DNA of 64,000 bases, taken from positions 62,001-126,000 of IMG/VR virus record IMGVR_UViG_3300046542_000227, one strand, 5' to 3'. Within the stretch, counting starts at the first letter, position 1. The number at the start of each line of letters is the position of its first letter. The position numbers and the translations under genes were made by a program. Of this stretch, positions 14,380 through 54,645 are shown one piece after another. Under the pieces are notes generated by a model. It ran no database searches. It was not told where the DNA came from and saw only the letters and a program-made list of their open reading frames with translations.

Positions 14380-15105
14380 ATGTTAGAAGCCATGTTGTTA
14401 ACAAAGAAGGAGGTACCTATACCTCCTACTGGGGCAACCTTTCTATGGGATCCGGTGCTCCAACAGGATCTTTATGGTAGTGGTGCCACGATCGCTTATA
14501 TTGGTGGCGGTACGGCCAACACAGATTATCTCATCGACGGTCAGGGTACTTTTAACCTCCCTACTACATCTTCAGGGTTTACCATTACATTGGCCAGCCC
14601 GTTGGACTTATCCGGTGGCGACTGGACCGTTGAATGGTCAACGCTCAACACGGTCAACAATGGTAACTACGGTACGGATATAGCGATTGATTCGGGATTC
14701 CCAGGGTCGGCTAAAGGCGTCCAAGCACGCTGGAGCGATACAGGTTTTGGTAACCGAGTACAGTTCTCCACCATCTTTCAACAGGTAACAGATTGCTGGA
14801 ATGCCTCCTTGACGAAGGTAACTTCGTTGAACACACTGCAACGTTTCGCAATGGTGTGCAAGAATGGGCAAGTCAGTGTGTTTATAAATGGTGTGAAGCA
14901 AATGTTGGCGAATGGAACCGGTGGTACCTATACGGCGGCATCATTCGCAGCTGCGCCAGCGAACTTGAAAGATCTCAAGTCCATCAAGATTGGTTGGCAG
15001 AATAGTACGGTTCAAGCGATGATCAGTCGTCATGGTCGTATCCGGATTACCCAGAGTGCACTGTATACCACCGACTACACGCCCGGTCCATTAGAGATGG
15101 TGTAA
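14380..15105 (+). CDS. Putative virion protein with ConA/LamG-like lectin fold
   Basis: MLEAMLL start; DWTVEW, FAMV.KNGQVSVFING and IRITQSALYT motifs; upstream TATG. Confidence 0.6.
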   Translation: MLEAMLLTKKEVPIPPTGATFLWDPVLQQDLYGSGATIAYIGGGTANTDYLIDGQGTFNLPTTSSGFTITLASPLDLSGGDWTVEWSTLNTVNNGNYGTDIAIDSGFPGSAKGVQARWSDTGFGNRVQFSTIFQQVTDCWNASLTKVTSLNTLQRFAMVCKNGQVSVFINGVKQMLANGTGGTYTAASFAAAPANLKDLKSIKIGWQNSTVQAMISRHGRIRITQSALYTTDYTPGPLEMV

Positions 15106-15149
15106 AGTTCTACGCCATGAGTAATACTATACGGACATAGCGCCGTAGT

Positions 15150-15311: not shown

Positions 15312-15359
15312 TTTCCATCATTATAGACTGCAGGCTTCGGTCTGCGGTTTATTCCCTAC

Positions 15360-15436
15360 GCCGGCTAACTTGGTAACGTCGCAATGCGCAAGGGGGCGAC
15401 GCCCTAACAGTGGTGTGAACCCACATAGCCGGCACC
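15360..15436 (+). ncRNA. tRNA-like element
   Basis: gccggcta/tagccggc stem plus ACC, cgtcgc/gcgacg arm, gtgg-TGTGAAC-ccac T-like arm. Confidence 0.5.
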
Positions 15437-15510
15437 TATTCGTAACGGCATAAGCATATCGCCAGGGGTAACCCTGGCTTTATGTCATCTTTCACTATAA
15501 AGGAAACACC

Positions 15511-16385: not shown

Positions 16386-16817
16386 ATGGCTAAGACTACA
16401 CCAGTACAGTACAACGTTCAATTCAACAAGCTCCAAGGTGAGGTTGCTCTGGAACTCAAAGCCACCCTGATCGAAATTGATCTGGAAGGTAAGGATGCTC
16501 GTCCTTTCTTCCACATCGAACGTAAGGGTAATCGCTGGTTGCTGATGCATGGTGGTGGCGCCTTGGGTTCGACGTTCCCTAATGCGATCGATCTGGAGAT
16601 CATCCGGATGGCTGACGATCGCTGGCTGCGTAACATGGCAACCAAGAAGGACTATCCAATCAAAGGTCTGACTAAACTCAATGTCAAACCACCCCTGTTC
16701 CACTTCGACGCCATTGGTGAGCCCAGTGAAGACAGTTGGCGCATGACGTTCTCTGATGGCATGTTCGACACTACAGCAGTGCTGACCTCTATTTCTTTCA
16801 GTCGTTGTGCTGGCTAA
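16386..16817 (+). CDS. Hypothetical protein
   Basis: GGGGA RBS. Confidence 0.7.
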   Translation: MAKTTPVQYNVQFNKLQGEVALELKATLIEIDLEGKDARPFFHIERKGNRWLLMHGGGALGSTFPNAIDLEIIRMADDRWLRNMATKKDYPIKGLTKLNVKPPLFHFDAIGEPSEDSWRMTFSDGMFDTTAVLTSISFSRCAG

Positions 16818-16829
16818 GAAAGAAACTAC

Positions 16830-17303
16830 CGGTGTGTCCCTCATATGCGGGTATAGCCTTTGGGGGCGTCTTCGTCGGTGTCCACACTCTCGGAGGCTGT
16901 ACTCGCTCTCTACTTAAACGGAATTTCAAGAGCCAAGCATCCCGCTTGGATTATGTCCGTCCAGGAGTTTTCGTGTTAGATCGACTCGACCTTGATGACG
17001 CTGAAATCCAACGCCTTGGGACTATCCAACGGCGATCCATAACGGAACCTACGATCCTCTGGTACACACCGCACCAGACACCTAAAGACAAACAGGGTAA
17101 TAGTCAATTATGCAAAACACCCAAAGCTTCGAACTGCCGAAGAAACAACGGGCATTGAGTTCCTCTGCCCCTCTCCAGTTCAAATATCACTGGCGTAAAG
17201 TCAGACTAATCGTCCCTGGCCCACAGGAGAAGTCTGCCGCCTAACCGAGTGCGTACCGAACTTTACGGTGGGGAGCCGTTCCCCCAGCCCCACCGTCTTT
17301 TTT
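16830..17303 (+). ncRNA. Candidate large structured ncRNA (about 470 nt) ending in a terminator
   Basis: Multiple helices with G-U pairs on + strand, possible pseudoknot 16830-37/17064-71, terminator 17265-17303; no credible ORF. Confidence 0.6.
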
Positions 17304-17384
17304 GATTGCACATAAACTGAAACCTATATAGCCTTAGTGAATTGAGAGCATAAAGCTCCGAACCCTCCTTTTAAGGAAGAAGCA

Positions 17385-17846
17385 ATGTTTAATACAAAAG
17401 GCAACACTTGGGTAATTCCTGATCTAGGGCTACTGGACATTCCGGATCACTTGATTCGTATGCGTGATGCGTGGGCTATCGAAACCGATGTGGATACTTG
17501 GTGGGCATGGCGTGACGCGGATCACGGTTGGAACTACATGGACTCGCTGAAACAAGCAGCCGTGTTCGCTGTAACTATCGGCAGCCTTGAAACTGAAGAG
17601 GCCCGTGAGTACAACAAGCTCTATCGCAACGATCGCCTAACGCCTACTGGGGTGATCGGTGTGTTCTTCCGTTCGGGTCTGCGTCAAGCATACCACGTCA
17701 TCCTAGACGGTAAGGTTACGATCTTCCCGTATAACGATGGCAAAGGCTTCTGTAAGGCCGCTGCGGCGTCGGTAAAGCTTATGTCCGATAAGACTAAGGC
17801 TTTCATCAAGCGCGTCGAGGCTGACGCTACACTGCGTCTACCATAA
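17385..17846 (+). CDS. Hypothetical protein
   Basis: AAGGA RBS; downstream of CTATATAGC promoter variant (17324). Confidence 0.7.
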   Translation: MFNTKGNTWVIPDLGLLDIPDHLIRMRDAWAIETDVDTWWAWRDADHGWNYMDSLKQAAVFAVTIGSLETEEAREYNKLYRNDRLTPTGVIGVFFRSGLRQAYHVILDGKVTIFPYNDGKGFCKAAAASVKLMSDKTKAFIKRVEADATLRLP

Positions 17847-19346: not shown

Positions 19347-19386
19347 GGACATAAGCCCCTGCCCGTAGGCAGGGGTTTTATGCCGT
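19347..19386. terminator. Terminator between convergent genes
   Basis: cataa-gcccctgcc-cgta-ggcaggggt-tttatgccg. Confidence 0.75.
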
Positions 19387-54460: not shown

Positions 54461-54645
54461 GTCTGCAAGATTCTACCGGTGTGCCCTCTATACAGACGTA
54501 TAGCCGTGGTGGAGCATTCCCGCAGTATAGATCCAAATGTCGCTTATGCCATCTTGAGGTTCGCTATACGGAACGCCATTGTACAATGGCACTCGTTATA
54601 CCCTTTAAGACTGCAACGCGCCCTAGCGCTTTATAGGAGGCTTTA

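What the first reader, a model, noticed from the sequence alone, without database searches (positions are those of the whole stretch)
16830..17303. Second large structured RNA candidate with a long-range pseudoknot
Seen: 13-bp helix 16847-59/16894-906 with two G-U pairs; hairpins at 16933-49, 17058-78, 17127-42, 17150-70 and 17175-93; multiloop 17194-201/17260-67 enclosing 17202-07/17231-36; strong terminator 17265-303. The loop of hairpin 17058-78 (acacaccg) is perfectly complementary to cggtgtgt at 16830-37. The last helix overlaps the 5' arm of the terminator by 3 nt, which could allow switching. Inference: an unannotated ncRNA of about 470 nt.
Basis: partly seen in the sequence, partly recalled or inferred. 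Interest (0 to 1): 0.75.

Follow-up and report, generated by a model that had tools for sequence, protein, structure and literature searches.

The report
Two small genes, structured leader
The proposed 470-base non-coding RNA is really a short phage messenger carrying two conserved small protein genes, preceded by a conserved folded leader of about 110 bases and ended by an ordinary terminator.

Summary
The window comes from a 267-kb jumbo phage related to Pseudomonas phage Noxifer. The reading as one ~470-nt ncRNA with a long-range pseudoknot does not hold.

- **Coding:** 16973-17244 encodes two small proteins. ORF A starts at GTG 16973 and runs to 17158 (61 aa). ORF B runs 17110-17244 (44 aa). 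They match Noxifer gp223 and gp224, are intact in all 17 loci examined (the window and 16 relatives), have ribosome-binding sites, and show dN/dS of 0.12-0.42.
- **Pseudoknot and internal hairpins:** the pseudoknot is absent even from the nearest relatives and is at chance level. The hairpins inside the ORFs are not conserved beyond the nearest clade.
- **Leader:** 16847-16961 is a conserved RNA structure. It has a long hairpin H1 and a short hairpin H2 closed by a second helix. 93% of pair cells are kept against 32-48% in slid controls, with compensatory changes.
- **Terminator:** the intrinsic terminator at 17265-17303 is conserved.
- **Inferred, not shown:** a promoter-like block, present three times in the genome, may start transcription at G16847. 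H2 resembles the tail of the phiKZ-type terminator motif and may terminate prematurely.

No RNA data were available.

The parts
16820..16847 (+). Promoter-like block AAGAAACTAC-N14-TATG. It starts at the stop codon of the variable upstream gene, and G16847 is the putative +1.
   Evidence: Conserved in the relatives from just after the upstream stop codon. Paralogous copies lie at 15105-15132, 19 nt before tRNA-Tyr, and at 54467-54493. Calling it a promoter is inference, by analogy with phiKZ T(-3)ATG(+1) and the AT-rich -24 motif (PMC7598289).
16847..16906 (+). Hairpin H1. The outer 13-bp stem is 16847-59/16894-906 and encloses a clade-specific branched insert. The 5' arm is sequence-conserved.
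   Evidence: The seven basal pairs are 95.5% paired in 17 distinct sequences. Three pairs carry changes on both sides, and there are many G-C/G-U switches. The loop ranges from a few nt to the 34-nt branched insert of the window clade.
16916..16924 (+). Conserved linker AAACGGAAT. ACGGA (16918-22) can pair with TCCGT (16956-60).
   Evidence: AACGGA is invariant except for a C-to-T change in the L007 clade, which keeps a U-G pair.
16933..16949 (+). Hairpin H2 (CCAAGC/GCTTGG). In the window it is closed by ACGGA/TCCGT; in the other clades by GGAC/GUCC.
   Evidence: A-U/A-U pairs in the window clade correspond to G-C/G-C elsewhere (two pairs with changes on both sides). The closing helix shows GGAC/GUCC changing to GGGC/GCCC in L012.
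16951..16961 (+). TTATGTCCGTC, which resembles the tail of the phiKZ-type conserved terminator motif (YTTATKYYGT).
   Evidence: Nearly invariant in the relatives. About 50 canonical hairpin-plus-TTATGYCG elements occur in intergenic regions of this genome. The phiKZ motif is quoted from PMC10914365.
16963..16967 (+). Shine-Dalgarno AGGAG of ORF A.
   Evidence: GGAG is invariant, 5-8 nt before the start codon, in all relatives.
16973..17158 (+). ORF A: 61 aa, GTG start, acidic N-terminus. Homologue of Noxifer gp223.
   Evidence: - blastp E = 5e-6 against gp223.
- Profile matches of E 1e-18 to 1e-34 in an open frame in all 17 loci.
- Seven representative clusters of 64-86 aa in 1.84 billion proteins.
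- dN/dS 0.25-0.42 in close pairs.
17110..17244 (+). ORF B: 44 aa, basic. Homologue of Noxifer gp224. It overlaps ORF A by 49 nt in the window clade only.
   Evidence: - blastp E = 1e-8 against gp224.
- Intact in all 17 loci.
- Five clusters in the 5.8-billion-protein set.
- dN/dS 0.12-0.20.
- Substitutions at codon positions 1/2/3 are 13/9/35 in three independent close pairs.
17265..17303 (+). Intrinsic terminator: 9-bp GC-rich stem followed by six U.
   Evidence: Every one of 11 relatives has a GC-rich hairpin (-16 to -27 kcal/mol) followed by a U run at this place, although the stem sequences differ.
17302..17349 (+). Promoter-like element of the next gene (TTGATT-N17-TATATA, then GTGAATTGAGAGC). 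It overlaps the terminator's T run.
   Evidence: Seven + strand copies of TTGAYW-N17-TATAWW that also share a (C/T)TGA(G/A)A spacer core (9 raw pattern matches); four of the seven are followed by GTGAAT. Conserved in the 11 relatives aligned here.

Best explanation
The interval is a compact bicistronic transcription unit of a phiKZ-like jumbo phage, not one large ncRNA.

**Shown**
- Two small proteins are encoded: ORF A (61 aa, acidic N-terminus) and ORF B (44 aa, basic). Both are conserved across the Noxifer-like phages and their function is unknown.
- They are preceded by a conserved structured leader, H1-linker-H2, with covariation.
- They are followed by a conserved intrinsic terminator.

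**Inferred**
- Transcription starts at G16847, from the three-copy block AAGWWCTAC-N12-14-TATR.
- H1 would then sit flush at the 5' end of the RNA and protect it from 5'-end-dependent decay.
- H2 with its TTATGTCCGT tail is a weak variant of the phage's phiKZ-type terminators. It would stop part of the transcripts just before the ribosome-binding site. That would yield a leader RNA of about 110 nt and set how much ORF A/B message is made. Read-through transcripts would end at 17265-17303.
For: **Coding**
- pairwise E = 5e-6 and 1e-8 to Noxifer gp223 and gp224.
- the same 64-74-aa and 35-46-aa genes are called in syntenic relatives.
- ribosome-binding sites.
- dN/dS 0.12-0.42. Third-position excess is 35/31/61 for ORF A and 13/9/35 for ORF B. 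By my chi-square on those counts, p is about 0.002 and 3e-5.
- both frames are open in all 17 loci.
- small families of proteins of matching length.

**Leader**
- a covariance model built without the window's clade finds 16844-16975 over the full model length (31 bits, E = 6e-6).
- a single copy in the genome.
- 93% of cells paired against 32-48% when slid; six pairs with double changes; 0 of 500 shuffles reach the covariation score.
- The G-U pairs in H1 fit the + strand RNA only.

**Terminator**
-.

**Promoter inference**
- three copies, one directly upstream of tRNA-Tyr.
- the phage has its own beta and beta' RNAP-like genes.
- PMC7598289.

**Attenuator inference**
- about 50 hairpin-plus-TTATGYCG elements.
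- PMC10914365: the phiKZ motif BCCYCCCCHWWDGGGRRGGBYTTATKYYGT.
- PMC11512511: 5'-UTR-derived sRNAs from premature termination in 201phi2-1.
Against: - No RNA-seq run was listed, so the 5' and 3' ends are unmeasured.
- Four relatives (L011, L012, L027, L028) have TATA rather than TATG at the putative start. In phiKZ all four bases are required (PMC7598289).
- H2 is short (4-6 bp) and lacks the CCYCCCC stem of canonical terminators, so it may not terminate at all.
- ORF A in the window clade starts with GTG, has a divergent C-terminus and shows the weakest constraint (dN/dS 0.42).
- Neither protein matches any Pfam or PHROG family.
- The alignment used for the pair counts was fitted to the model's structure, which favours that structure.
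Confidence: 0.8

Rival explanations
1. One reading: one unannotated ncRNA of about 470 nt (16830-17303), folded into many helices and tied together by a long-range pseudoknot, possibly switching with its terminator.
For: All the pairings exist. The stretch folds slightly better than shuffles (z = -2.3). H1, H2 and the terminator are real.
Against: - Two conserved protein genes under purifying selection fill 16973-17244.
- The pseudoknot is absent in all relatives and expected by chance in 45% of shuffles.
- The internal hairpins are not conserved.
- No Rfam match.
Confidence: 0.03
2. There is no promoter at 16820-16847. The unit is read through from the upstream genes as part of a longer polycistronic mRNA. 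H1 and H2 are intercistronic signals: nuclease processing or protection sites, or insulators between cistrons.
For: - No sigma-70-like promoter was found on the + strand.
- There is no terminator between the upstream 143-aa gene and the leader.
- The upstream genes are co-oriented and tightly packed.
- The conserved block starts exactly at the upstream stop codon.
Against: - The upstream gene differs between relatives while the block is kept.
- The same block precedes a tRNA cluster and a third locus.
- H1 is only 7-13 bp in most relatives, too short for a classical RNase III site.
Confidence: 0.25
3. The leader (about 16847-16960) is above all a trans-acting small RNA gene. H1 is a 5' stem-loop, AAACGGAAU(AUUGA) is a single-stranded seed, and H2 is its terminator. 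The two ORFs are expressed only by read-through.
For: - The architecture fits: a 5' hairpin, a conserved unpaired stretch, then a hairpin with a U-rich tail.
- 5'-UTR-derived sRNAs arise this way in 201phi2-1, and one is conserved among giant phages (PMC11512511).
Against: - No RNA data, and no target was searched for or identified.
- H2 is a weak terminator.
- The linker can pair within the leader (ACGGA/UCCGU).
Confidence: 0.15
4. H1 acts at the DNA level, as an inverted-repeat operator or cruciform bound by a protein, rather than as an RNA hairpin.
For: The 5' arm is strongly sequence-conserved. Part of it (GTATAGCC) recurs after the second copy of the promoter-like block at 54498-54505.
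Against: - Frequent G-U pairs in H1 (12 of the 112 pair cells in 16 sequences) would be C-A mismatches on the other strand and in a DNA palindrome.
- Arm spacing varies from about 6 to 34 nt.
- The 3' arm is free in sequence as long as it pairs.
Confidence: 0.05

Closest known systems
Noxifer genes NOXIFER_223 and NOXIFER_224 (hypothetical proteins, 64 and 44 aa) and their upstream intergenic region in Pseudomonas phage Noxifer MF063068
   Same: - Same synteny in front of the conserved 153-aa gene.
- Protein similarity E = 5e-6 and 1e-8.
- Same leader, matched by the covariance model.
- Same terminator-plus-promoter arrangement downstream.
   Different: - In the window clade ORF A starts with GTG, has a different C-terminus and overlaps ORF B by 49 nt.
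- H1 carries a 34-nt branched insert.
- The upstream neighbour gene is different.
5'-UTR-derived small RNAs made by premature termination in giant Pseudomonas phages 201phi2-1 and phiKZ (PMC11512511)
   Same: A putative start site is followed within about 110 nt by a terminator-like hairpin just upstream of a coding sequence. The sequence and fold are conserved among related jumbo phages.
   Different: No transcript ends have been measured here. The sequence is unrelated to the published sRNA005 locus, which lies upstream of a tail gene. H2 is much weaker than the validated terminators.
phiKZ-type conserved intrinsic terminator motif 5'-BCCYCCCCHWWDGGGRRGGBYTTATKYYGT-3' (PMC10914365)
   Same: About 50 canonical copies occur in this genome. 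The leader's H2 is a hairpin followed by TTATGTCCGT, which matches the tail apart from one extra C.
   Different: The H2 stem is CCAAGC/GCTTGG (CCGG/CCGG in Noxifer), not the CCYCCCC/GGGRRGG stem. The real terminator of the unit (17265-17303) is a plain hairpin plus U run without the TTAT tail.
5'-terminal stem-loops that stabilise bacterial and phage mRNAs (the E. coli ompA 5' UTR hairpin is the textbook case; from my own knowledge)
   Same: If transcription starts at G16847, H1 begins at +1 with no single-stranded 5' overhang. This holds in all relatives folded except L012, where pairing starts at +2.
   Different: The start site is inferred. The strong sequence conservation of the 5' arm suggests a further role, for example in promoter recognition.

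Membership tests
Any described RNA family (Rfam 15) | A match to a covariance model at the gathering score | tested here: not met
   Only three tRNAs are found elsewhere in the window. Nothing in 16300-17800 matches, even at E <= 10, except a meaningless Xist fragment.
Protein-coding gene (ORF A, ORF B) | The reading frame is kept open across diverged relatives | tested here: met
   Both profiles match an uninterrupted frame in all 17 loci. The neighbouring protein is 62-91% identical across them.
Protein-coding gene (ORF A, ORF B) | Purifying selection on the protein (dN/dS below 1, excess of third-position changes) | tested here: met
   dN/dS is 0.25-0.42 for ORF A and 0.12-0.20 for ORF B in close pairs. 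Substitution counts by codon position are 35/31/61 and 13/9/35.
Protein-coding gene (ORF A, ORF B) | A ribosome-binding site and a start codon at a conserved place | tested here: met
   GGAG lies 5-8 nt before the ORF A start in all relatives. GAGAG precedes ORF B in most; it is weaker (AGGG) in the window clade.
Protein-coding gene (ORF A, ORF B) | The product is detected | not testable with these tools
   No RNA or proteome data. No RNA run was listed.
Conserved structured RNA element (leader H1/P2/H2) | Base pairs are kept across relatives with compensatory changes, above controls | tested here: met
   93.1% of cells are paired against 31.6-47.6% when slid. Six of 15 pairs have double changes. 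0 of 500 shuffles reach the covariation score. Caveat: the alignment was fitted to the model.
H-type or long-range pseudoknot (16830-37/17064-71) | The pairing is conserved or covaries in relatives | tested here: not met
   It is perfect only in the window. The best complements in relatives are 6-7 of 8 at unrelated positions. 45% of shuffles give a perfect 8-mer.
Intrinsic (Rho-independent) terminator, 17265-17303 | A GC-rich hairpin directly followed by a U run, at the end of a transcription unit | tested here: met
   A 9-bp stem (-16 kcal/mol) plus six U. Present in all 11 relatives although the stem sequences differ.
phiKZ-type conserved terminator (motif of PMC10914365), for H2 | A CCYCCCC...GGGRRGG stem followed by YTTATKYYGT | tested here: not met
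   The tail TTATGTCCGT is present with one extra C. The stem is short and of a different sequence. H2 resembles the family but is not a canonical member.
phiKZ late promoter | T(-3)ATG(+1) overlapping the start site, all four bases required | tested here: inconclusive
   TATG lies at 16844-47 and in most relatives. It is TATA in L011, L012, L027 and L028, and in the two paralogous copies. The start site itself is not measurable here.
Riboswitch or translational switch | Alternative structures that consistently hide or expose the ribosome-binding site | tested here: inconclusive
   The predicted unpaired probability of the SD is 0.08-0.20 in the window clade and 0.41-0.73 elsewhere. No conserved anti-SD pairing was seen. 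These are predictions only, and ligand binding is not testable here.

The most novel reading that the evidence does not exclude
The leader (about 16847-16960; about 75 nt in Noxifer) is a new, family-specific regulatory RNA of Noxifer-like jumbo phages. It would be made from its own phage-polymerase promoter, capped by a 5' hairpin and ended by a weak phiKZ-type terminator. It would act both as an attenuator of the two small-protein genes and as a stable small RNA with a conserved single-stranded AAACGGAAU seed.
Probability: 0.15. Interest if true: 0.55.

Novelty: new member of a known kind. Interest (0 to 1): 0.3.

Why it matters
- **Annotation:** the result corrects a gap. Gene callers left about 570 nt empty in this phage and in its closest relative, although two conserved small genes lie there.
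- **A testable leader:** it defines a covarying leader structure that is absent from Rfam. Noxifer grows on P. fluorescens SBW25, so the structure can be tested in the laboratory.
- **Transcription signals:** three kinds of signal could help map transcription in this little-studied branch of RNAP-encoding jumbo phages. They are a three-copy promoter-like block, a seven-copy promoter-like family and about 50 phiKZ-type terminators.

It is not a new class of RNA.

Tried and rejected
- **Rfam** at the gathering score and at E <= 10 gave nothing.
- **tblastn of the two small proteins against GenBank phages** gave nothing usable at database scale. The homology to Noxifer was seen only in the direct pairwise comparison.
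- **A single-protein scan of IMG/VR** found no relatives. A scan with a two-sequence alignment, and look-ups by identity, did.
- **MAFFT alignments of the leader** misplaced the 3' arm of H1. RNAalifold on them was therefore uninformative, and I used a covariance-model alignment instead.
- **PHROGs, Pfam and the ESM Atlas** give no function for ORF A or ORF B.
- **The ORF A + ORF B complex prediction** gave no answer. It is not evidence either way.
- **RNA sequencing runs:** none was listed.
- **A sigma-70 promoter in the leader:** none convincing (plus inspection).
- **RNase III site for H1:** rejected, because most relatives have only 7-13 bp.
- **Type I toxin:** rejected, because neither peptide is hydrophobic.
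- **H1 as a tRNA remnant:** the 5' arm GCGGGUA-UA-GCC looks like a tRNA 5' end, but ARAGORN and the Rfam tRNA model find nothing.
- **TTATG after H2 as a phiKZ-type late promoter:** considered first, then set aside. The same tail follows hairpins between convergent genes, as at 19348/19378, and it matches the published phiKZ terminator motif.

Full report
**Context.** The window is bases 62001-126000 of a 267,320-bp virus record with direct terminal repeats. Its nearest named relative is Pseudomonas phage Noxifer, 278 kb, genus Noxifervirus. The genome carries beta- and beta'-like RNA polymerase genes. A review of jumbo-phage RNA polymerases cites the Noxifer genome paper (PMC7598289). The finding lies in a 567-nt stretch between a 143-aa ORF (16386-16817) and a conserved 153-aa ORF (17385-17846).

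**Observation.**
- The 493-nt stretch folds modestly better than shuffles (z = -2.3).
- No Rfam family matches.

**Two small genes.** In Noxifer the syntenic interval carries two annotated small genes, gp223 (64 aa) and gp224 (44 aa).
- The window has counterparts. ORF A runs from GTG 16973 to 17158 (61 aa; blastp E = 5e-6). ORF B runs from ATG 17110 to 17244 (44 aa; E = 1e-8).
- I collected 16 further loci from IMG/VR, JGI, ENA, Logan and GenBank. Their neighbouring 153-aa protein is 62-91% identical to the window's.
- Both frames are open and match the family profiles over their full length in all 17 loci (E 1e-18 to 1e-34).
- Gene callers call both genes in most relatives. They call neither in the window's nearest relative, L007. 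The GTG start and the 49-nt overlap probably explain that.
- A GGAG box lies 5-8 nt before each ORF A start.
- In three independent close pairs, dN/dS is 0.25-0.42 for ORF A and 0.12-0.20 for ORF B. Substitutions at codon positions 1/2/3 sum to 35/31/61 and 13/9/35. By my chi-square on those counts, p is about 0.002 and 3e-5.
- The families are small and confined to this phage group: seven representative clusters for ORF A among 1.84 billion proteins and five for ORF B.
- Neither protein has a Pfam or PHROG match.
- The longer ORF from TTG 16805 is not coding upstream of 16973. H1 is 60 nt in the window and 62 nt in L007, so that frame is not preserved.

- The pseudoknot strand CGGTGTGT reads CGGCCTGT or CGGTCTGT in the nearest relatives, and its partner region is different there. 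None of the nine relatives compared has the pairing. A perfect 8-mer complement between leader and downstream part arises in 45% of shuffles.
- In a codon-guided alignment, hairpins 17058-78, 17127-42, 17175-93 and helix 17202-07/17231-36 drop to random levels outside the window's own clade.
- Hairpin 17150-70 keeps pairing through two double changes within that clade only.
- Helix 17194-201/17260-67 has only a broken counterpart in the nearest relatives.

**The leader is a real structure.** Upstream of ORF A, all relatives share the following elements, in order.
- A conserved block that begins at the stop codon of an otherwise variable upstream gene.
- Hairpin H1. Its 5' arm is nearly invariant in sequence. 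Its 3' arm and loop differ between clades: the stem is 7 bp in Noxifer, 12-13 bp in L011 and L027, and 13 bp around a 34-nt branched insert in the window.
- An unpaired AAACGGAAU stretch.
- A short hairpin H2, closed by a second helix. That helix is GGAC/GUCC in most relatives, GGGC/GCCC in L012, and ACGGA/UCCGU in the window clade.
- TTATGTCCGTC, then the ribosome-binding site.

A covariance model built from seven relatives without the window's clade finds window 16844-16975 over its full length (31 bits, E = 6e-6). It finds nothing else in the genome.

On the 17 distinct aligned sequences, 93.1% of pair cells are standard pairs, against 31.6-47.6% with the partner slid by 1-3 columns. Six of 15 pairs show changes on both sides, and no shuffle of 500 reaches the covariation score. 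This alignment was fitted to the model, which favours the structure. The variable arm spacing and the G-U pairs (12 of the 112 H1 pair cells) nevertheless argue independently for an RNA hairpin on the + strand.

**Signals around it.**
- The terminator at 17265-17303 is matched in all 11 relatives by a GC-rich hairpin plus U run of different sequence.
- Its T run overlaps TTGATT-N17-TATATA. The pattern matches nine places in the genome; seven + strand copies, including this one, also share a (C/T)TGA(G/A)A spacer core.
- The genome also holds about 50 intergenic copies of a GC-rich hairpin followed by (C/T)TTATG(C/T)CG. That is the conserved phiKZ terminator motif BCCYCCCCHWWDGGGRRGGBYTTATKYYGT (PMC10914365).
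- H2 plus TTATGTCCGT looks like a weak, non-canonical copy of that motif.
- The block before H1 (AAGAAACTAC-N14-TATG, 16820-16847) has two paralogues. One is at 15105-15132, starting at a stop codon and lying 19 nt before tRNA-Tyr. The other is at 54467-54493, which is also conserved in Noxifer.

**Mechanism (inferred).**
- Two published phiKZ features guide the inference: late promoters are marked by T(-3)ATG(+1), and middle promoters by an AT-rich element near -24 (PMC7598289). By analogy, I infer that the block is a phage-polymerase promoter starting at G16847.
- H1 would then be flush with the 5' end of the RNA. This holds in all relatives folded except L012, where pairing starts at +2. 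That arrangement is known to slow 5'-end-dependent decay (my own knowledge).
- In 201phi2-1, a start site followed closely by a termination site gives 5'-UTR-derived sRNAs (PMC11512511). H2 could act in the same way as a leaky stop before the ribosome-binding site.
- Predicted accessibility of the ribosome-binding site shows no consistent pattern.
- None of these steps is measured, because no RNA run was listed.

**Verdict.**
- The finding as interpreted is not supported. The region is mostly coding.
- A smaller claim survives: a conserved leader RNA of about 110 nt that is not in Rfam.
- I rate this as a new member of a known kind, with modest interest.

Noticed in passing
Whole genome. In the window, for example 8227(+), 15447(-)/15480(+), 17878(+), 19348(-)/19378(+), 26071(+), 31946(-), 52989 and 53000(+), 54454(+), 55218(-)/55250(+), 59659(-): About 50 intergenic copies of G(G/A)CATA(A/G)-GC-rich hairpin (often CCCCTCCC-N4-GGGAGGGG)-(C/T)TTATG(C/T)CG, often as palindromic pairs on both strands. 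This matches the conserved phiKZ intrinsic terminator motif (PMC10914365).
   Followed up: partly
Window 17302-17349, plus six other + strand places in the genome (genome coordinates 28957, 45737, 46190, 150889, 243535, 246131): A repeated promoter-like element, TTGAYT-N8-10-(C/T)TGAGAACTATATT. In four of the seven copies GTGAAT follows about 6 nt later. It is probably a promoter class of this phage. Which polymerase uses it is unknown.
   Followed up: partly
Window 15105-15132, 16820-16847 and 54467-54493: Three copies of AAG(A/T)(A/T)(A/T)CTAC-N12-14-TAT(G/A)C. The first and second begin at the stop codon of the preceding gene, and the third lies 3 nt after a terminator tail. The first lies 19 nt upstream of tRNA-Tyr/tRNA-Asn. 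The third is conserved in Noxifer at 244803-244874.
   Followed up: partly
Window 54489-54645: The untranslated stretch after the third block, upstream of a 99-aa ORF, has a loosely similar layout. GTATAGC (54498-54504) pairs with GCTATAC (54564-54570), followed by ACGGAA, a hairpin GCCATTG/CAATGGC, and GCGC-CCTA-GCGC plus TTTAT before the ribosome-binding site. The fold is not better than shuffles (z = 0.49), and the leader model does not match it.
   Followed up: partly
Window 15312-15510: About 200 nt without a convincing ORF lie after tRNA-Asn. They contain hairpins (for example AGACTGCAGGCTTCGGTCTGCGG) and a palindromic terminator pair at 15447/15480.
   Followed up: no
Window 17150-17170: The hairpin GGGCA/TGCCC, whose loop holds the ORF A stop codon, keeps pairing in the nearest relatives through two double changes that are non-synonymous in ORF B (GGGTA/TACTC, GAGTA/TACTC). 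It is not conserved in other clades.
   Followed up: partly
Window 17110-17158 and L007 2731-2779: ORF A and ORF B overlap by 49 nt only in the window's clade, where ORF A has a different C-terminal tail. In all other relatives the two genes are separated by 9-20 nt.
   Followed up: yes
Window 16847-16860: The conserved 5' arm of H1, GCGGGUA-UA-GCC, looks like the 5' end of a tRNA (acceptor strand, U8-A9, start of the D stem), and tRNA genes lie nearby. ARAGORN and the Rfam tRNA model find no tRNA there.
   Followed up: partly
Window 16386-16817 compared with L003 2651-3484, L011 1905-2393 and L012 2127-2387: The gene directly upstream of the conserved unit differs between relatives: 143, 277, 162 and 86 aa with no evident similarity. 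This junction looks like a hot spot for gene replacement.
   Followed up: no
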